Shown in pieces: positions 5,074 through 55,709 of a DNA stretch of 64,000 bases. Each line of letters begins with the position of its first letter. Positions within the stretch are counted from its first letter, which is position 1. The position numbers and the translations under genes are program-made. The stretch lies in the sequence record ON529860.1; one strand, 5' to 3'. A model generated the notes under the pieces. That model saw only the letters and a program-made list of their open reading frames with translations, made no database searches and was not told the origin of the DNA.

Positions 5074-5525
5074 GGGTCCTCCGTGGCGTCGTCACCAGCA
5101 CGCGTAAAGGAACGTCCAGCGACTGTCAACAGTGCTGACATTCGGCGCCGCCGGTTTTTTAGGCGCGTCTCGACCAACTGGCGAAGCCTGTCGGGGTCAG
5201 CGGTGAAGGCGCGCTTCATCGCCCATTTCTCCTCCAAGGGTTTTGAGCCGGCCTCGGAATTGCAGATGGCGTGGGAGACGACGACGTTTTCCGGCAGGTA
5301 GCCGTCGGGGTGGTCCCGTCCCAGCAGGTGCTCGATCGTGCAGATCAACGCACCGCTGCCGAAGGGCCTGGCGCAGAACCAGCAGACGTCGCCGTCGCGG
5401 GCTCGGGCGTTCTCTCTCAGGAAGACGCGATACTCGTCGCGATGCTGGCGCGGGTCCTTGTCGGACCAGACCCTCATCCCGAGGTGATAGACACGGCGCC
5501 ACGATAGGGGCGTGGGCAGGGTCAT
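5070..5525 (-). CDS. HNH endonuclease-family protein
   Basis: CWFC...TIEHLL...ENVVVSHAICNSEAG (CxxC plus H-N-H/N pattern); start moved to MTLPTP. Confidence 0.75.
   Translation of the reverse strand: MTLPTPLSWRRVYHLGMRVWSDKDPRQHRDEYRVFLRENARARDGDVCWFCARPFGSGALICTIEHLLGRDHPDGYLPENVVVSHAICNSEAGSKPLEEKWAMKRAFTADPDRLRQLVETRLKNRRRRMSALLTVAGRSFTRAGDDATEDP
5104..5129 (-). promoter_or_regulatory. conserved phage promoter copy 1
   Basis: plus strand GTAAAGGAACGTCCAGCGACTGTCAA. Confidence 0.8.
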
Positions 5526-48262: not shown

Positions 48263-48498
48263 CAGTCGGCACGCTCATAGTCGACGAAGGTCGCGCCGCC
48301 GGTCAGGTCGTCGATATAGCCTTCAGGGCCGTTTTCGCAGCGGGCGGCGATCTCGTCGATCAGGGCGGTCCAGTCGGCGCCGCGTTTCCTGGCCTCGCGC
48401 TGGGCCACCTCGCGGAAGCGGGCGATACAGGCCTCGGGCGTGTCCGCGAACACCTCGATCTTGAGGTAGGCGCGCATATTGGCGATCAGTCGATACAT
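48262..48498 (-). CDS. hypothetical protein (78 aa)
   Basis: SD GGGAGG with GACGAC leader. Confidence 0.7.
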   Translation of the reverse strand: MYRLIANMRAYLKIEVFADTPEACIARFREVAQREARKRGADWTALIDEIAARCENGPEGYIDDLTGGATFVDYERAD

Positions 48499-48530
48499 GG
48501 GGTCCTCCCTGTTTGTCGTCAGCCTTTCTC

Positions 48531-48556
48531 CTAGAGGGCCGAGTGACGGTTGTCAA
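48531..48556 (-). promoter_or_regulatory. degenerate promoter variant
   Basis: CTAGAGGGCCGAGTGACGGTTGTCAA; follows terminator, precedes GACGAC leader. Confidence 0.5.
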
Positions 48557-48568
48557 CGCTCTCGCGCC

Positions 48569-48599
48569 AAAGAAAAAGCGGCGGGATTGCTCCCGCCGC
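48569..48599 (-). terminator. intrinsic terminator ending the hfa-like operon
   Basis: GCGGCGGGA/GCAA/TCCCGCCGC then TTTTTCTT on minus strand. Confidence 0.85.
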
Positions 48600-48625
48600 C
48601 TCTCATTCAGCCTTGATCCGAAGAC

Positions 48626-49621
48626 TTACGGACGGGTGCCGGCCGTCACGGTCACGGTGTTGCCGATAGCGGTGGCTCCCACCGTGGCGCTGCCGCCGAT
48701 GAAGCTGTTGTTCAGGTTCATCGTGGCGATTTGCGGCGTATTCAGCCCTTGCGCGCTGATGTTGGCGAGGACGCCGCCGGCGCCGTTGATGTTGACCATG
48801 TTACCGAACGCCCCGGCGTTGCCCGTCAGCGAGGAGCCGAACGACGCCGAAGAGATGTTGGTGGTCGCCGTCTGGGTCGCGCCCGGATAGCCGCCAGTCC
48901 CGAAACCATTGGTCTGGAGGACCGTGGCGTTGACGAAACCGTCGGCCGACACGTCAAGGGCCGTGCCAACCGCTTGAGAGATCAGGCCGGCGGAGCCGCC
49001 GACGCTGCCGTTCGAGTAGTTCAGCGCCGCGTTTTGGACTGCACCGGAGTTCACCAGCAGGGGCACGTTGCCGCCATTGATCAGGACGTCACGGTCCGCA
49101 TCAATGTTGATCGCGGCGCCCACTGCGCCAGAGACGCCATCCAGGCGACCATCCACGCGGGTCGAGCCCATGTTCAAGGTCGAGGATTGGTTGCCTTGGT
49201 TGACGATCGCGAAGTTCGAGTTGACCACCGCGTCGAACGCACGCACGTCGAGCGCCCCGCCCAGGGACTGAGCGCGCAGGTCAGCGCGATCGATGGACGA
49301 GGAGTTGACGTTGAGCGTCGAGGTTTGCACGCCGCCATTCGCGATGTGCGCGCCGCCGATATAGGGGTTGTTGTAGTAGGCGGCATTGCCCGAAATCGTG
49401 GCGGTTCCGAACGCCTCGACGTTCAGTGCCGAACCCACGGCCGCAGCTTGGCCCGTCAGCAGGTGATCGACACGGACGTTGGCGACATTGGCCGTGGCGG
49501 TTTGAGTGTTCGGCGAGTGGATGCCGAGGTTACTGCCGACGCGGACGTCGACCGACTGCGCCGAAGCGGCGCCGGCGAACAGGACGACCGAAGCGGCCGC
49601 CAGAAGGAAAGTCTTACGCAT
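48626..49621 (-). CDS. secreted beta-repeat protein, HfaD/curlin-like
   Basis: Sec signal (AGAASA-Q); six repeats Q-x-(A/S)-(T/A)-x-N...A.G..(L/V).V; rich in Asn/Gly/Ala/Ser/Thr; downstream of hfaB homolog. Confidence 0.7.
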   Translation of the reverse strand: MRKTFLLAAASVVLFAGAASAQSVDVRVGSNLGIHSPNTQTATANVANVRVDHLLTGQAAAVGSALNVEAFGTATISGNAAYYNNPYIGGAHIANGGVQTSTLNVNSSSIDRADLRAQSLGGALDVRAFDAVVNSNFAIVNQGNQSSTLNMGSTRVDGRLDGVSGAVGAAINIDADRDVLINGGNVPLLVNSGAVQNAALNYSNGSVGGSAGLISQAVGTALDVSADGFVNATVLQTNGFGTGGYPGATQTATTNISSASFGSSLTGNAGAFGNMVNINGAGGVLANISAQGLNTPQIATMNLNNSFIGGSATVGATAIGNTVTVTAGTRP

Positions 49622-49770
49622 TGAGATATTCTCCCGTTGATGAATGGACGAGGCTCGAATGAGCCCCGCTTAATCCCGACCGCTGAACTGGGAGCGGTCG
49701 TCCCTCCCGCCGGGAAGCCCCGGAGGTTGGCGACGCGGTGACCCAGGGCCGCCGCGAATAGGGGTGCGGC

Positions 49771-50661
49771 TTAAGACCGGAAGCTGGCGTCGACGAGCGG
49801 CGCGCAGTCGCGGAAGTAGTTGCCGTAGAGCGGGTTCAGCAGTTCCAGCGTGGCGTATTCCAGCGTGGCGCGGACGCCGAGTTGGAGCGGCTCCTGGCCC
49901 TGCTTGCCGGTGTTGATGTCCACCAGATAGTCGCCGAAGAAGCGGAACAGGCCGGCGCGGGTCTCGTAGCCGATGATCTGCTTCTGCACCGAGACGGTCT
50001 TGACGACCTTCAGCGACTTGGTGTCGACCAGGCGCAGGTCCACCGCCGTGTTGATCACGTAGTAGCGCATGCCGGCCTCGAACAGGCTGACGCCCAGTTC
50101 GGCGCCGCCCGAGACGATGTCGTAGTTGACCTCGGTGATGCCGCCGACGATGTAGTAGTCGGAGCCCTGATACTGACCAGCGGTCAGGTTCAGGCGGCGC
50201 AGCGTGGCGGCCTGAGGGTTCGCGGGATCGTAGGCCGGGTCCTGGATCAGTTGGTTCTGGGTCAGGGTGGCTTCGTTGGAGGCGATGTCCATGTCGAAGC
50301 GCTCGACCTGTTCGATGCCGTCCAGCTTGCCCAGAGCCGACATGACCATGAGCGAGCCGCCCTGGGTGATGCGGAAGCCGCCTTCACTGGCCTCGTTCGA
50401 GAACTTGCCGGTGTAGTCGCGGATTTGGCCCACGGCGATGCGGTTCGGAACCACGCTTTGACGCGTCGCCTGGGCGAAGCATTGCATGGCGGGGTCCATC
50501 GGGCTGGAGTTCAGCGTCGGGCGGGTGCCGACCACGACCGGGGCCTGGCCTTGGGCGTTCAGAACCGGCGAGACGGGGGCGGTCGTTGAGGCGCAGGCAG
50601 CCGTCGACAGGGCCAGCACCGACAGCGCGGCCAGGGTGATGATGCGGTTCTTCATGCTCAA
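49771..50661 (-). CDS. hfaB: CsgG-family outer-membrane secretion lipoprotein, holdfast anchor HfaB-like
   Basis: lipobox STAAC; IAVGQIRDYTGK, ITQGGSLMVMSALGK, VERFD, YIVGGITE, VDLRLVDT, VRSLQKQIIG-type and EPLQLGVR motifs. Confidence 0.88.
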   Translation of the reverse strand: MSMKNRIITLAALSVLALSTAACASTTAPVSPVLNAQGQAPVVVGTRPTLNSSPMDPAMQCFAQATRQSVVPNRIAVGQIRDYTGKFSNEASEGGFRITQGGSLMVMSALGKLDGIEQVERFDMDIASNEATLTQNQLIQDPAYDPANPQAATLRRLNLTAGQYQGSDYYIVGGITEVNYDIVSGGAELGVSLFEAGMRYYVINTAVDLRLVDTKSLKVVKTVSVQKQIIGYETRAGLFRFFGDYLVDINTGKQGQEPLQLGVRATLEYATLELLNPLYGNYFRDCAPLVDASFRS

Positions 50662-51155
50662 GCAGCCCCGCCCGGTTGACCATTCGTCTGCGAGCCGGAG
50701 CCCGTGTTCGTATTGGTCTGGTTGCCCTGGCTCGTGACGGTGTTGTCACGAATGGTGTTGGTCGCGTCCTGGGTGTTGCCGGTCGAGGTCTGGTTGTTGC
50801 TGACCTGATTGGACGAACCCGAGCACGTCAGCGAGGCGCCGACGGCGGAGGCCGAGCAGTTGTTGTGGGTCACCGACTGGTCGATGAACTGGAACACGTT
50901 GTTGGTGTTCGCGGCCGAGCCGCCCAGAAGACCGCCGGCTCCAGCGACGGCGGCGGGATTGCCGGCCTGAAGCTGATCGAAATAACCGGCCTTGTTCAGT
51001 TCGAACAGTTGCAGGCTGTTCTGCTTGGCGACGCGGTCGTTGGCCGTCCCGAAGCGCCACGGGGCGTCTTCGCCGATGGCGCGATCCTGGGCGTGCGCGG
51101 CGCTCGCCGCCATGGCGAGGGCGACAGCCACCCCCGCGAGAATCTTCATTCTCAT
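50658..51155 (-). CDS. secreted N/Q/S/T/G-rich protein, HfaA/curlin-like
   Basis: signal peptide AASAAHA-Q; GG.LGGSAANTNN linker; Asn/Gln/Thr-rich C-terminus; first gene of hfaB operon. Confidence 0.6.
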   Translation of the reverse strand: MRMKILAGVAVALAMAASAAHAQDRAIGEDAPWRFGTANDRVAKQNSLQLFELNKAGYFDQLQAGNPAAVAGAGGLLGGSAANTNNVFQFIDQSVTHNNCSASAVGASLTCSGSSNQVSNNQTSTGNTQDATNTIRDNTVTSQGNQTNTNTGSGSQTNGQPGGAA

Positions 51156-51244
51156 ATAAAAGTCCCTCCGTATCGGCGCGTGCGCCTTGATGATGGGCCG
51201 GGGCGCGGGAGAGTTCCCGCCGGCCCCGGTCAGTGATCGAGGGT

Positions 51245-51270
51245 GTAAAGAAACGATTTACGTCTGTCAA
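51245..51270 (-). promoter_or_regulatory. conserved phage promoter copy 14 (drives hfa-like operon)
   Basis: GTAAAGAAACGATTTACGTCTGTCAA. Confidence 0.75.
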
Positions 51271-51866
51271 CACTCGACGTCATTTTTCTTGAATCGGTTG
51301 ATCGGGATGCCGCTCAGCGCCTCCCGATACCGCGAGACCGCCGCCTCTGGCGTCAGGAATTCTGACGTGCTCAAGGTCGCAGCGATCCACAGGCGTTGAG
51401 GACGATCCGCCCACACGCCGCCCCAGTCCGCCGCCAAATGTCGGGAATCCTGCCGTTCAGACCCGCATTGAGTCAGAGCGTGTAGATGGGTCTGCTGTTT
51501 CAGGCAGATCAGATCGCCCGCGAGATGCGGGGCGTCGAGCCCGCGCCAGACGCGCGGACCGGTCACATTGTAGCCCGAGGCCCGGAGGATCAGGAGGTAG
51601 CCGTAACGGGGGAAGCCCTGGTCGCGGTGGAAGCCGATCTCGCCGTTGGCCGAGATCACCTGGACCTCGCCAAAGGCCTGACCCATGTTGACCTCGGATT
51701 CCCACAGGCGGTGGCGCATGTGCGGCCGTTGCTGGCGAACGTAGTCGAGTTGCTCGCGCTTGAGGTTGGCGATCCACTCGGGCGGCACCAGAGGCAGCAG
51801 GGCCTTGCCGACGCCGCGCGCCACCCAGCCGATGGCGTCGTATTTAGGCGGGCTCAGGTCGTGCAA
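51267..51866 (-). CDS. putative 2OG-Fe(II)/cupin-fold protein
   Basis: start moved to TTG; FHRD (HxD), distal HLHAL and late Arg. Confidence 0.55.
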   Translation of the reverse strand: MHDLSPPKYDAIGWVARGVGKALLPLVPPEWIANLKREQLDYVRQQRPHMRHRLWESEVNMGQAFGEVQVISANGEIGFHRDQGFPRYGYLLILRASGYNVTGPRVWRGLDAPHLAGDLICLKQQTHLHALTQCGSERQDSRHLAADWGGVWADRPQRLWIAATLSTSEFLTPEAAVSRYREALSGIPINRFKKNDVEC

Positions 51867-52435
51867 GGCAGGCCTCGCCGCAGACGCCCGACACCGAGTT
51901 CGACCGCCGCCTTGGCCTCGCGCAGCGAGGGCGCTTCCCCCTCGGCGAGCGGCGGACCGCCGGGCGCGGCCGGGTTGTCGATCAACCAGGCGTAGGTCTT
52001 GCCGTCCCAGAGCCCCGAAGGCCCGATCGAGACCCGGCCCAGACGCGGCGCCTCGCGGGTGTTGCGCGGCTCGTCGAGGTCGATCACGGGGGTGTTGGAC
52101 CACAGGCCGTGACAGCGATGACCGCGCTCCCAGTGCGCGCCGCGCATCAGGTCCTTGCGCGCCTGGCGTGCGACGCGCTCCAGGACGCGCCCTTCTTCAG
52201 CGAGGATTTCCCGGCGCCCGAGGCGGGTCAGAATATAGGCCGGCTCACCGGGCGCGAGGCGTGCGTTCCGGCCCTGCCAGACGATGAAGCCCGCCCGTTC
52301 CGCCGCGCTCAGGGTCGCCCCGCGCCCGACGGTGCGAGACTGCGACCCCCGCCCGTTCACCAGCGGGACCCAGGACGGATCGTTCCCGGATTCCAGCAGC
52401 TTGAGGACGTGCATGATTTCGGCGGAAACGCTCAA
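51854..52435 (-). CDS. hypothetical protein, N-terminal wHTH-like
   Basis: TLSAAERAGFI...YILTRLGR. Confidence 0.7.
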   Translation of the reverse strand: MSVSAEIMHVLKLLESGNDPSWVPLVNGRGSQSRTVGRGATLSAAERAGFIVWQGRNARLAPGEPAYILTRLGRREILAEEGRVLERVARQARKDLMRGAHWERGHRCHGLWSNTPVIDLDEPRNTREAPRLGRVSIGPSGLWDGKTYAWLIDNPAAPGGPPLAEGEAPSLREAKAAVELGVGRLRRGLPCTT

Positions 52436-53034
52436 GACGCGAGGCTTTCAGCTTCGCGTTCCAGACCCTCGGCGCGGGCGATCACGGCAGCGCGCGCCTC
52501 GCCGTCCAGAACCCTCGCGGTGTCGCGCATCTCCTGCGCGGCGCGGCGCAGGCCGGCGATCTCCAGGTCCAGGCCGTTGGACGGTTTGTCGATGACGATC
52601 ACGCGGACCTTGTCGGCGCGGGCGCGATCGCTGGACTGCTTCTTGGGCTTGATCCGGTTTGCGATCGGTTTGTAGCCGCCACTCTGGCCCTCGATCGGTC
52701 CATAGGTATGGTCGAGCGTGAACCAGCCCGGCTGCGTGGCGCTCGGGCGGCGAATCTGGCGCGCCTGGATGGGGAACTCCGGCGCGGCGATTCTCACCCA
52801 GCGCTCTTCGTCGAAGGGGATGAAGGGTTCGAACGTCTTGGGACCGCCCATGTCGGGGCTGTCGCGGCCGATCTTGACCCCGTCCATGGCGAAGAGCACG
52901 AGGTCCATAAAGACCGCGTCGCCGGAGAAGTAGGCCTGACGCACGCGGCCGACGCGCACGGCGCCGAGGCCATCGCGCCTTTCAGCCACCCAGTCGCCCT
53001 GCGCGATAGGGAGAACCCGTTCTGCTTCGGTCAC
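52432..53034 (-). CDS. hypothetical protein
   Basis: start moved to GTG of MTEAERVL; GRDSP..GGPK.FEP motif. Confidence 0.7.
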   Translation of the reverse strand: MTEAERVLPIAQGDWVAERRDGLGAVRVGRVRQAYFSGDAVFMDLVLFAMDGVKIGRDSPDMGGPKTFEPFIPFDEERWVRIAAPEFPIQARQIRRPSATQPGWFTLDHTYGPIEGQSGGYKPIANRIKPKKQSSDRARADKVRVIVIDKPSNGLDLEIAGLRRAAQEMRDTARVLDGEARAAVIARAEGLEREAESLAS

Positions 53035-54860: not shown

Positions 54861-54885
54861 GTAAAGGAATGCTGCGCGGTGTCAA
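54861..54885 (-). promoter_or_regulatory. conserved phage promoter copy 16
   Basis: GTAAAGGAATGCTGCGCGGTGTCAA (one base shorter). Confidence 0.8.
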
Positions 54886-55709
54886 CCCATCGCGTCGCCG
54901 TAGTCGCGTTCAATCGGGTCCGCGCCCGCCATGATGAACTCGGTGCGGTTGACGATGCGCTGGAGCGGCGGGACCGACAGTCGGGTCATGGAGGAGCGAA
55001 CCACCGACGTGTCCTCAAGTCGCGCCGGGCGCATGGCGGCGGGAATGCGGGCGGCCTCGGCCGGCGTCAGGGGCCGCTCGACCGTCTCCTTGCGCACGAA
55101 CGTCCCCAGGCGGAACGCCTCGGGGTAGTCGGCGAACACCACGCCCTTCCCGGCGATCATGTCGATCATCGCCTGGCGCCCCTTGCCATGCATCTGACTC
55201 GGCGAGTATTGCGCCCGGCACGCCATGGAGGCGGCGTTCTTCTGGCAGTCGAGGTTGCGCCACAGGAACATGTTGGCGGCTTCCCAAGGATGAGGAAGCT
55301 GACAGACGCGCGCGTCGAACGCCGGCAGGCGATCGTTGAAGGGCTCCCAGAAGCGGATGGCGTGCGCCATGCGCGCGGCCGCCATCGACGCCAACACCGA
55401 GGTCATCTTGACGATCTTGCCGGAGAAGAAGATGTCGCTCTCGTAGTCGGGCGCCTCCCACACCAGGCTGATCTCGTCAGACTGAACGTAACCGATCTTG
55501 GCGTGGGTCTTGTCGACCAGATACTCCGCCACCACGATCATCGCCTCGGTCATGCGCGGATCAAACGGCCGCTCCATGCCCTTGGTGAACTTGGAGAAGC
55601 CTCGGCCGTCGATGCGGGCGTAGACTGGCAGGGACGGGAAGAAGCGGCGCGCGGTCTCGCGGCGCTCATAGTCCTTCATCCGGTCGCCGAGTTCGTCCTT
55701 TGTCGTCAT
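54882..55709 (-). CDS. tRNA(His) guanylyltransferase Thg1 / Thg1-like 3'-5' polymerase
   Basis: RMKDYE, RIDGRGFSKFT, PFD, YVQSDEIS, FFSG...KM.S..AS, PAFDAR, WR..DC.KN. Confidence 0.9.
   Translation of the reverse strand: MTTKDELGDRMKDYERRETARRFFPSLPVYARIDGRGFSKFTKGMERPFDPRMTEAMIVVAEYLVDKTHAKIGYVQSDEISLVWEAPDYESDIFFSGKIVKMTSVLASMAAARMAHAIRFWEPFNDRLPAFDARVCQLPHPWEAANMFLWRNLDCQKNAASMACRAQYSPSQMHGKGRQAMIDMIAGKGVVFADYPEAFRLGTFVRKETVERPLTPAEAARIPAAMRPARLEDTSVVRSSMTRLSVPPLQRIVNRTEFIMAGADPIERDYGDAMG

What the first reader, a model, noticed from the sequence alone, without database searches (positions are those of the whole stretch)
48569..51270. Phage-encoded holdfast-anchor/curli-like secretion operon (hfaA-like, hfaB/CsgG, hfaD-like)
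Seen: a self-contained unit with its own copy of the phage promoter (51245-51270) and a strong terminator (48569-48599). It encodes a signal-peptide N/Q/S/T-rich protein, a CsgG-family lipoprotein and a secreted six-repeat beta protein. Established: in Caulobacter, HfaA, HfaB (CsgG-like pore) and HfaD anchor the holdfast at the stalk tip, and CsgG exports curli amyloid. The gene order here matches hfaA-hfaB-hfaD. Inference: the infected cell exports a phage-specified amyloid-like fibre. It could change adhesion or biofilm behaviour, hijack or poison the host holdfast anchor, or mask the polar receptor (superinfection exclusion). The two substrates look too divergent to be recent captures of host genes. 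I cannot confirm whether this operon has already been described in related phages.
Basis: partly seen in the sequence, partly recalled or inferred. Interest (0 to 1): 0.85.

Follow-up and report, generated by a model that had tools for sequence, protein, structure and literature searches.

The report
Phage surface-display operon with swappable gene
A giant Brevundimonas phage carries its own three-gene outer-membrane export module, related to the curli and holdfast-anchor machinery, and its third gene is replaced wholesale between otherwise identical phages, which suggests the phage places a strain-variable protein on the surface of the cell it infects.

Summary
The window is Brevundimonas jumbo phage vB_BpoS-Domovoi/Papperlapapp. 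Between a repeated promoter-like motif (51243-51270) and a strong terminator (48567-48599), the minus strand carries three genes. p1 is a 165-aa protein with a signal peptide and an N/Q/S/T/G-rich tail. p2 is a 294-aa CsgG/HfaB-family lipoprotein. p3 is a 331-aa six-repeat all-beta protein with a signal peptide.

- p2 is HfaB-like but falls below NCBI's HfaB cut-off and sits in its own phage clade.
- p3 is a remote HfaD-like repeat protein.
- p1 is not HfaA. It belongs to an uncharacterised family of small exported partners encoded upstream of non-Hfa CsgG/HfaB-like genes in many bacteria and in an ICE.

New here: p3 is an exchangeable cassette. Bambus and Marchewka are about 100% identical in DNA across the locus except for the mature p3 coding part (34% protein identity). 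Alleles cross phage lineages, yet each allele class is under purifying selection.

Best reading: a phage-specified surface-display module with a variable outward-facing component. Its biological role (adhesion or exclusion) is not shown.

The gene family was already annotated in GenBank (CcrColossus, CcrPW, Kabachok), and phage CsgG/CsgF pores are known from marine phages. The complete trio and the cassette swapping appear undescribed.

The parts
51243..51270 (-). Promoter-like motif, one of 15 minus-strand copies in the window; it overlaps the stop codon of the upstream gene
   Evidence: 16 matches (15 on the minus strand) against 0.9 expected, with 0 of 100 shuffles reaching that number; the copies sit upstream of ribosome-binding sites and starts.
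51156..51242 (-). Unusually long (about 88 nt) structured 5' leader of p1
   Evidence: -38.9 kcal/mol, z -2.4. Other copies of the promoter motif have leaders of about 20-30 nt.
50658..51155 (-). p1: 165-aa Sec-exported small partner protein. It has a conserved mature N-terminal motif, two invariant Cys and an N/Q/S/T/G-rich tail. It is not HfaA.
   Evidence: family and invariant columns; homology to bacterial partner proteins, hhalign 97.8%; no HfaA relation; no PDB or Pfam relative; AF2 pLDDT 46.
49771..50655 (-). p2: 294-aa CsgG/HfaB-family outer-membrane lipoprotein, the presumed channel
   Evidence: CsgG and HfaB matches; 1743 relatives; own phage clade; phrog_20175, unknown function.
49622..49770 (-). 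Structured p2-p3 spacer of about 150 nt, with a hairpin just after the p2 stop that is kept in divergent phage contigs
   Evidence: 12 of 23 predicted pairs have compensatory changes across 7 loci.: -71.5 kcal/mol, z -3.0. Spacer length is 138-153 nt in 9 related loci.
48626..49621 (-). p3: 331-aa Sec-exported six-repeat all-beta protein, a remote HfaD-like protein and the hypervariable component
   Evidence: repeats and beta prediction; HfaD link; very few relatives; allele divergence.
48614..49552 (.). Approximate extent of the exchangeable cassette: the mature p3 coding part plus about 12 nt beyond the stop. The signal-peptide codons and the terminator are the conserved flanks.
   Evidence: (sliding identity). 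Bambus and Marchewka are identical over the first 69 nt of p3 and again from 12 nt past the stop, and unalignable in between.
48567..48599 (-). Intrinsic terminator: G+C-rich hairpin plus T-run
   Evidence: -32.8 kcal/mol, z -3.5; sequence. CcrColossus has an annotated terminator at the same relative position.

Best explanation
The locus is a phage-borne, three-gene envelope module of the CsgG/HfaB type, and it is a lineage of its own rather than a copy of the host hfaABD genes.

Proposed mechanism:
- All three products are exported by the Sec pathway (shown by their sequences).
- p2 is a CsgG-fold outer-membrane lipoprotein and presumably forms the oligomeric channel (homology shown, pore inferred).
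- p1 is the conserved small partner always encoded just upstream of this kind of channel. It is probably an adaptor or cap that engages the channel through its conserved mature N-terminus and presents its N/Q/T/G-rich tail outside. This is inferred from position and conservation.
- p3 is a beta-repeat protein of the HfaD type. I propose it is secreted through p2 and held or polymerised on the outer surface of the infected cell (inferred).

p3 is the outward-facing part that selection acts on. Its scaffold residues are kept, the rest is free to differ, and whole alleles are exchanged by recombination between the conserved signal-peptide codons and the terminator.

The infected cell therefore acquires a phage-specified, strain-variable surface fibre or coat. 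My estimate for its role:
- about 0.35 that it is an adhesin, holding the infected cell to surfaces or neighbouring host cells;
- about 0.30 that it masks receptors or excludes other phages;
- the remainder unknown.
For: 1. Family assignments.
- p2: Pfam CsgG 1e-17; NCBIfam HfaB 236.6 bits; alignment with solved CsgG over residues 45-275.
- p1: hhalign 97.8%, E 8.5e-13 to the upstream partners of 58 bacterial CsgG/HfaB-like loci, with signal peptides removed. Columns shared with those partners are shown.
- p3: six repeats; all-beta periodic model, pTM 0.58; HfaD is the only family hit recurrently, by 12 of 27 members; hhalign 38-58%; precomputed Pfam HfaD on relatives.

2. Conservation of the trio. 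It has the same order, tight p1-p2 coupling and a spacer of about 150 nt in the five Brevundimonas phages, in CcrColossus and CcrPW, in a 500-kb IMG/VR contig and in several phage-like metagenome contigs.

3. Cassette behaviour (protein identity for p1/p2/p3).
- Bambus versus Marchewka: 100/100/34%, with about 100% identical flanking DNA.
- Kabachok carries the Marchewka-type allele, although the isolation paper places it in the Domovoi species.
- Marchewka versus contig L022: 73/73/84%.
- Within an allele class, dN/dS is 0.13-0.34, like p1 and p2.
- The columns invariant across alleles are the repeat-motif residues.
- Only 19 clusters among 1.84 billion representatives match the p3 profile.

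4. p1 is identical in phages with different p3 alleles, so any p1-p3 contact must use conserved scaffold features.
Against: - No experiment or expression data exists for any member.
- The pore state of p2 was not modelled.
- The p1 model is low-confidence and mostly disordered, so its adaptor role rests on gene position and conservation only.
- The p3 model has mean pLDDT 56, and Foldseek found nothing significant. The best hit, the functional amyloid FapC, has E 0.13 and probability 0.02.
- The window's own p3 does not hit the HfaD HMM; the link runs through relatives and profile comparison.
- The p2 lipobox is non-canonical at position -3.
- The tree is neighbour-joining, without support values.
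- Phages with different p3 alleles were isolated on the same host strain, which fits neither a simple host-tracking adhesin nor any single role cleanly.
Confidence: 0.6

Rival explanations
1. One reading: a captured hfaA-hfaB-hfaD holdfast-anchor operon that replaces, hijacks or poisons the host's own holdfast anchor at the cell pole.
For: - The gene order and export signals match bona fide hfaABD loci.
- p2 scores far higher on the HfaB model than on the CsgG model.
- p3 relatives hit HfaD models weakly.
- The hosts are Caulobacteraceae, and at least B. abyssalis, B. diminuta and C. crescentus carry holdfast genes (PMC3798453, PMC6707917).
Against: - p1 has no detectable relation to HfaA. It belongs instead to the partner family of non-Hfa loci.
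- p2 scores 236.6 bits against a cut-off of 300. True HfaB scores 407.
- The phage p2 proteins cluster apart from the bona fide HfaB clade.
- The window's p3 fails the HfaD model outright.
- An anchor that must fit one host polysaccharide would not be expected to come in 30%-identical alleles within near-identical phages isolated on one host.
Confidence: 0.15
2. A phage outer-membrane pore used for lysis timing, permeabilisation or uptake, as proposed for the CsgG/CsgF pores of pelagimyophages and phage Melnitz. On this reading p1 and p3 are accessories rather than cargo.
For: PMC9004378 describes phage-encoded CsgG plus CsgF without fibre genes and proposes a gated pore acting in lysis. Here too, a small exported protein is encoded directly upstream of the CsgG homologue.
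Against: - A third, conserved, exported repeat protein under purifying selection is always present. This is the cargo-like element that the marine phages lack.
- No lysis gene is recognisable among the neighbours tested.
- tblastn with p2 found no pelagiphage or Melnitz protein at E<=1e-3.
- p1 gave no CsgF hit in Pfam or the PDB.
Confidence: 0.08
3. p3 is a virion host-range protein of the tail-fibre or tailspike type. That class of phage gene typically shows cassette swapping.
For: The allele-swapping pattern is typical of receptor-binding proteins. Beta-helical tailspikes appear in the non-significant part of the Foldseek list.
Against: - Every allele starts with a conserved cleavable Sec signal peptide, and virions assemble in the cytoplasm.
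- p3 is co-transcribed with an outer-membrane channel gene and lies among small non-structural genes.
- None of the Foldseek matches is significant (all E > 0.1).
Confidence: 0.05
4. The trio is a selectively neutral passenger, and p3 diverges only because low-complexity repeat proteins evolve quickly.
For: p3 is compositionally biased and has very few detectable relatives.
Against: - dN/dS is 0.13-0.34 within allele classes.
- The breakpoints fall sharply at the signal peptide and the terminator in genomes otherwise about 100% identical.
- One allele is more conserved across lineages than its neighbouring genes.
- The trio is retained from phages of about 280 kb up to a 500-kb contig.
Confidence: 0.05

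Closest known systems
HfaA-HfaB-HfaD holdfast anchor of Caulobacterales (PMC6707917; bioRxiv 10.1101/2022.07.20.500906)
   Same: - Three-gene order: small exported protein, CsgG-like lipoprotein, large exported repeat protein.
- p2 is closest to the HfaB model.
- p3 shares the HfaD type of repeat and a matching C-terminal motif region.
   Different: - p1 is unrelated to HfaA.
- p2 and p3 are below the equivalog cut-offs.
- The module is carried by lytic jumbo phages and forms a separate clade.
- p3 is hypervariable and exchanged as a cassette.
- No link to holdfast polysaccharide is shown.
Curli (type VIII) secretion: CsgG channel with CsgE and CsgF accessories and CsgA and CsgB fibre subunits
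   Same: - CsgG-fold lipoprotein, aligned over its full length with solved CsgG.
- A small exported protein is encoded directly upstream of the channel gene, which is where I recall csgF lying in E. coli.
- The candidate substrates are N/Q/G-rich repeat proteins.
   Different: - No curlin repeat, CsgE or CsgF was detectable by Pfam or PDB sequence search.
- Amyloid formation is not shown.
- The protein I had in mind for p1 was CsgF, and it did not come back as a hit.
Phage-encoded CsgG/CsgF pores of pelagimyophages and Methylophilales phage Melnitz (PMC9004378)
   Same: A phage carries a CsgG-family channel plus a small partner. The proposed roles include capture of neighbouring cells.
   Different: - Those phages lack any fibre or cargo gene, whereas a conserved third gene is present here.
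- There is no detectable sequence relation at tblastn E<=1e-3.
- The phage group and the hosts are different.
Uncharacterised bacterial and ICE modules: a p1-like partner plus a CsgG/HfaB-like protein (often fused to an OmpA-like domain), sometimes followed by a large third gene
   Same: - The p1 family is shared (hhalign 97.8%).
- p2 is 42-52% identical.
- One version, with a third gene, sits at the end of a Trb conjugation operon in Sphingomonadales.
   Different: - Most bacterial versions have the OmpA-like fusion and no third gene.
- The third genes of the ICE and short-type loci show no relation to p3 or HfaD.
- The phage p2 proteins form a separate clade.

Membership tests
HfaABD holdfast anchor system | HfaB equivalog (NCBIfam NF037935, cut-off 300 bits) | tested here: not met
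   p2 scores 236.6 bits. Bona fide HfaB from Robiginitomaculum scores 407.2, Colossus p2 206.9 and the ICE version 188.5.
HfaABD holdfast anchor system | HfaA present (NCBIfam NF037934, cut-off 50 bits) | tested here: not met
   p1 gives no hit at E<=1, whereas true HfaA proteins score 77-147 bits. An HMM built from true HfaA finds no phage p1. hhalign probability is 0.4% and 6%.
HfaABD holdfast anchor system | HfaD present (NCBIfam NF037936, cut-off 100 bits) | tested here: not met
   The window's p3 gives no hit at E<=1. In the individual scans, relatives scored only 23-39 bits; the group scan gave a best E of 4e-10. True HfaD scores 174-313 bits. Remote similarity only: hhalign 38-58%.
HfaABD holdfast anchor system | Gene order small exported protein, lipoprotein, large exported protein in one unit | tested here: met
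HfaABD holdfast anchor system | Anchors holdfast polysaccharide at the cell pole | not testable with these tools
   This needs localisation and biochemical data.
CsgG family (Pfam PF03783) outer-membrane lipoprotein channels | CsgG domain above Pfam's gathering score, and full-length similarity to solved CsgG | tested here: met
   64.6 bits against 20.8. PDB CsgG: E 1.3e-9 for the single sequence over residues 45-275 and 1.8e-17 for the profile.
CsgG family (Pfam PF03783) outer-membrane lipoprotein channels | Lipoprotein signal peptide with an acylated Cys | tested here: inconclusive
   There is a hydrophobic N-terminus followed by Cys21. Position -3 is Thr, not the canonical Leu. No dedicated predictor was available.
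CsgG family (Pfam PF03783) outer-membrane lipoprotein channels | Nonameric beta-barrel pore | not tested
   Both structure-prediction jobs went to p1 and p3, and no multimer modelling is on hand.
Curli system substrates and accessories (CsgA, CsgB, CsgE, CsgF) | Curlin repeat, or CsgE or CsgF domains, in the flanking proteins | tested here: not met
   No such Pfam hit at E<=10 for the p3 alleles or for 26 p1-family members. No PDB sequence relative of p1 at E<=10.
Phage CsgG/CsgF pores (pelagimyophages, Melnitz) | Channel plus CsgF only, with no fibre gene, and sequence relatedness to those phage genes | tested here: not met
   A third gene is present here. tblastn of p2 against 50,697 phage records found only Dolichocephalovirinae: 9 records covering 7 phages.
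Uncharacterised p1-like partner plus CsgG/HfaB-like module (bacteria, ICE) | Small exported partner with the conserved mature N-terminal motif and an invariant Asn-Cys, encoded directly upstream of the channel gene | tested here: met
   hhalign 97.8%, E 8.5e-13 with signal peptides removed. Joint alignment with invariant F35 and C100 and nearly invariant E29, N99 and G106. The gap between p1 and p2 is 2 nt.

The most novel reading that the evidence does not exclude
The trio is a previously unrecognised kind of phage 'surface identity' locus. The infected cell is coated with a phage-encoded fibre whose specificity part (p3) is kept polymorphic by frequency-dependent selection among co-circulating jumbo phages. 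Through it the phage would control which particles or cells can bind the infected cell: exclusion of rival phages, protection of progeny from debris, or selective capture of new hosts. On this reading the same p1 plus channel chassis is a widespread, unstudied secretion system that mobile elements (phages and ICEs) have repeatedly armed with different cargo.
Probability: 0.25. Interest if true: 0.85.

Novelty: new variant of a known kind. Interest (0 to 1): 0.66.

Why it matters
Lytic phages are rarely seen to build a structure on the outside of the cell they are about to kill. Here a complete export-and-display set (channel, partner and cargo) is conserved from phages of about 280 kb up to a 500-kb contig. 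Its cargo gene behaves like a specificity determinant: discrete old alleles, purifying selection within each allele, and clean swapping between otherwise identical genomes from one sampling site.

That gives a concrete, testable handle on two questions:
- What phage-encoded CsgG-type pores are for. This has been open since they were found in marine phages.
- How the little-understood HfaD-type proteins are handled by HfaB-type channels.

It also points to a large, unnamed family of partner proteins for CsgG/HfaB-like channels in bacteria and conjugative elements.

Tried and rejected
- HfaA identity of p1: rejected.
- CsgF, CsgE or CsgA identity of p1: no hit in Pfam or the PDB.
- Structure of p1: AF2 with 21 sequences gave pLDDT 46, mostly disordered. 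It was too poor for a fold search.
- Structure of p3: only two sequences were admissible for the alignment, giving pLDDT 56. Foldseek against the PDB gave no significant match. I draw only 'all-beta, periodic' from it.
- Genome-collection scan for host hfa loci: only 6 loci came back (Robiginitomaculum, one Hyphomicrobiales and one Gemmatimonadales MAG), with no Caulobacter or Brevundimonas. Bona fide hfaABD loci were instead recognised among metagenome loci by their NCBIfam scores and an HfaA HMM. The host's own HfaB could therefore not be compared directly.
- The local Pfam copy lacks the HfaD family PF27277 that appears in precomputed annotations.
- Rfam: only a sub-threshold chance hit, Acido-1, lying on the terminator.
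- The sigma-70 and terminator consensus scanner found neither the promoter motif nor the terminator. Both were shown by other means.
- A diversity-generating retroelement as the source of p3 variation: rejected on the pattern. The whole mature region is unalignable and differs in length (326, 331 and 355 aa), rather than showing site-specific changes.
- Relation of the ICE and short-type third genes to p3 or HfaD: none.
- Lysis-cassette context: none recognisable.

- My script printed a majority line for the 15 promoter-like sites. I use that line for nothing and describe the motif only by the search pattern and its counts.


Full report
**Origin and anatomy**

Window 48500-51400 is 100% identical to Brevundimonas phage vB_BpoS-Domovoi (ON529855, 352.7 kb) and to Papperlapapp. 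Both are jumbo siphophages of the subfamily Dolichocephalovirinae, isolated from sewage on B. pondensis. In Domovoi all three genes are annotated 'hypothetical protein'.

On the minus strand lie:
- p1, 50658-51155, 165 aa;
- p2, 49771-50655, 294 aa, with its ATG 2 nt after the p1 stop;
- p3, 48626-49621, 331 aa, after a 149-nt spacer.

A pattern taken from the site at 51243-51270 matches 15 times on the minus strand of the 64-kb window, against 0.9 expected. Nearly all copies sit just upstream of a ribosome-binding site and start codon. It is therefore a genuine repeated promoter-like element.

The copy in front of p1 is followed by an unusually long, structured leader of about 88 nt. The hairpin at 48578-48599 with its T-run is a convincing intrinsic terminator (-32.8 kcal/mol, z -3.5).

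**What the proteins are**

*p2* is a CsgG/HfaB-family lipoprotein.
- Pfam CsgG scores 64.6 bits against a cut-off of 20.8.
- It aligns with solved E. coli CsgG over almost the whole mature protein.
- NCBIfam HfaB scores 236.6 bits against 37.9 for CsgG.
- 236.6 is below NCBI's HfaB cut-off of 300. A bona fide HfaB, flanked by bona fide HfaA and HfaD, scores 407.

In a neighbour-joining tree of 93 homologues, the phage proteins form their own clade together with two metagenome contigs of unclear origin. That clade is separate from the true HfaB clade and from a large clade of bacterial proteins that are mostly fused to an OmpA-like domain (no support values).

*p1* is not HfaA.
- NCBIfam has an HfaA model that recognises true HfaA at 77-147 bits. 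p1 gives nothing at E<=1.
- An HMM built from true HfaA finds no phage p1, and the reverse is also true.
- Profile-profile comparison gives 0.4% and 6%.

With signal peptides removed, the phage p1 profile matches the small proteins encoded directly upstream of 58 bacterial CsgG/HfaB-like genes at 97.8% (E 8.5e-13). The match lies over a conserved motif at the very start of the mature protein. A joint alignment also shows an invariant Cys preceded by a nearly invariant Asn.

This partner family has no Pfam, NCBIfam or PDB relative. The AlphaFold model of p1 is low-confidence and mostly disordered.

By position (small exported protein directly upstream of the channel gene) it recalls CsgF. CsgF did not come back from any search, so this is an analogy, not a finding.

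*p3* is a repeat protein of the HfaD type, but only remotely related.
- The window's own p3 hits no family.
- Its relatives in CcrColossus and in phage-like contigs hit NCBIfam HfaD below threshold (E 1.5e-5 to 4.7e-10).
- HfaD is the only family hit recurrently, by 12 of 27 p3-family members.
- Four relatives carry precomputed hits to Pfam PF27277 (HfaD), two of them unmarked, meaning E<=1e-5.
- hhalign against seven or eight true HfaD sequences gives 38-58% probability over 131-151 columns.

The model is all-beta with strands recurring once per repeat (pLDDT 56, pTM 0.58). Foldseek finds nothing significant.

**The new observation: p3 is a swappable cassette**

Protein identities for p1/p2/p3:

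| Pair | p1 | p2 | p3 |
|---|---|---|---|
| Domovoi vs Bambus | 93% | 99% | 34% |
| Bambus vs Marchewka | 100% | 100% | 34% |
| Marchewka vs Kabachok | 92% | 96% | 93% |
| Marchewka vs contig L022 | 73% | 73% | 84% |

- The isolation paper places Kabachok in the same species as Domovoi, yet Kabachok carries the Marchewka-type p3.
- In DNA, Bambus and Marchewka are essentially identical (95-100% per 100-nt window, mostly 100%) over about 5.9 kb, except for the body of p3, which is unalignable.
- Identity holds for the first 69 nt of p3 (the signal peptide) and resumes 12 nt after the stop codon.
- Against contig L022, the p3 allele is more conserved than its neighbours (84% against 73%), which indicates transfer between lineages.
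- Within an allele class, dN/dS is 0.13-0.34, the same range as p1 and p2. The alleles are therefore functional and constrained.
- Across alleles, the invariant columns are the repeat-motif residues, the signal peptide and, in the Brevundimonas-phage group, a short C-terminal motif.
- Only 19 clusters among 1.84 billion representative proteins match the p3 profile at E<=0.001.

This combination is the signature of a specificity determinant. It is not neutral drift and not a diversity-generating retroelement.

**Distribution**
- tblastn against 50,697 phage records finds the trio only in the five 350-kb Brevundimonas phages and in CcrColossus and CcrPW.
- IMG/VR adds a 500-kb contig and a 107-kb contig.
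- Metagenome contigs with phage-like gene content carry the same trio, with p3 of 335-500 aa.
- A related three-gene set (p1-like partner, channel and an unrelated 453-aa protein) lies at the end of a Trb conjugation operon in an integrative element of Sphingomonadales.
- Most bacterial relatives are two-gene sets with an OmpA-like fusion and no third gene.

**How it most likely works**

Shown: three co-oriented genes between a promoter-like motif and a terminator; Sec-type signal peptides on all three; CsgG homology of p2; membership of p1 in a channel-partner family; the HfaD-type repeats and cassette behaviour of p3.

Inferred: p2 forms the outer-membrane channel, p1 docks on it, and p3 is exported and displayed or polymerised on the infected cell. 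p1 is identical in phages with different p3 alleles, so any p1-p3 contact must use the conserved scaffold.

The role of the displayed protein is open. I give about 0.35 to adhesion. Capture of neighbouring cells has been suggested for phage curli pores (PMC9004378), and the ICE parallel fits a benefit from cell contact. I give about 0.30 to receptor masking or exclusion.

The rivals are a true hfaABD capture, a lysis pore, a virion fibre and a neutral passenger. They are weighed in their own sections.

**Comparison with what is known, and novelty**

The CsgG/HfaB homologue has been annotated since 2012 in CcrColossus ('putative CsgG-like curli assembly protein'), in CcrPW ('hfaB') and in Kabachok. 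Phage CsgG/CsgF pores are described for marine phages.

In the searched library I found no paper that discusses the trio in Caulobacter or Brevundimonas phages. The phiCbK genomics paper mentions neither curli nor hfa.

The following appear new:
- the complete channel-partner-cargo set in phages;
- the assignment of p1 to a widespread unnamed partner family rather than to HfaA;
- the clean allelic replacement of p3.

I rate it a new variant of a known kind.

My script printed a majority line for the promoter-like sites, and I use it for nothing.

Noticed in passing
window 5102-57091, minus strand (15 sites: ends at 5129, 7476, 8561, 14912, 18243, 19926, 27975, 30590, 31726, 39725, 44483, 47733, 51270, 53993, 57091): A repeated promoter-like element with two fixed blocks 16 nt apart. 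It has 15 copies against 0.9 expected, and nearly all lie 20-30 nt upstream of a ribosome-binding site and start. It probably marks one temporal class of phage transcripts.
   Followed up: partly
L010:5459-8363 (Sphingomonadales chromosome CP045434; same in L011-L013): A p1-like partner, a CsgG/HfaB-like lipoprotein and a 453-aa protein sit directly after trbL, virB8, trbG and trbI and a DUF2274 gene, and before a serine recombinase. This is an integrative conjugative element carrying the same kind of module with a different third gene.
   Followed up: partly
L033-L111 (metagenome loci): At least 556 metagenome stretches encode p2 relatives. Among the 80 loci kept, most are two-gene sets: a p1-like partner of 180-230 aa plus a CsgG/HfaB-like protein of about 440-480 aa. 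The longer proteins that were checked carry a C-terminal OmpA-like domain. It is a widespread module with no named family for the partner.
   Followed up: partly
window 49622-49770 and the equivalent spacers in L016, L017, L019, L022, L023, L026: The p2-p3 spacer keeps its length (138-153 nt) and a hairpin just after the p2 stop, with compensatory changes across divergent phage contigs. It could be an attenuator or a transcript-stabilising element that sets the p3:p2 ratio.
   Followed up: partly
window 51156-51242: The leader of p1 is about 88 nt long and strongly structured, unlike the short leaders behind the other copies of the promoter motif.
   Followed up: partly
L019:6328-6648, L023:6186-6506, L026:6481-6804: In three phage-like contigs a thioredoxin-fold gene directly follows p3. 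p1 has two invariant cysteines, so a link to disulfide formation is conceivable but was not examined.
   Followed up: no
window about 48294-48490 and 52074-52460: Two further mosaic stretches. The small gene downstream of the terminator is only about 57% identical between Domovoi and Bambus/Marchewka. A stretch upstream is 48-73% identical between Kabachok and the other three. Both are much less extreme than p3.
   Followed up: no
L021/L027 (IMG/VR UViG_3300049988_000286, 499,572 bp): A 500-kb contig classed as viral carries the same trio, with a 475-aa p3 that has a precomputed Pfam HfaD hit. Its p2 is 72% identical to that of contig L024, which also carries a GGDEF/EAL gene and may be bacterial.
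   Followed up: no
L001:12383-13210 (Domovoi; window about 54882-55709), L022:10-831, L017:690-1142: A tRNA-His guanylyltransferase (Thg1) gene lies a few kb from the trio in Domovoi and in contig L022. Contig L017 instead has a fragment resembling histidyl-tRNA synthetase.
   Followed up: no
window 48577-48637, minus strand: A sub-threshold Rfam match to Acido-1 RNA (26.5 bits against a cut-off of 50, E 0.029) lies on the terminator hairpin. It is most likely chance.
   Followed up: yes
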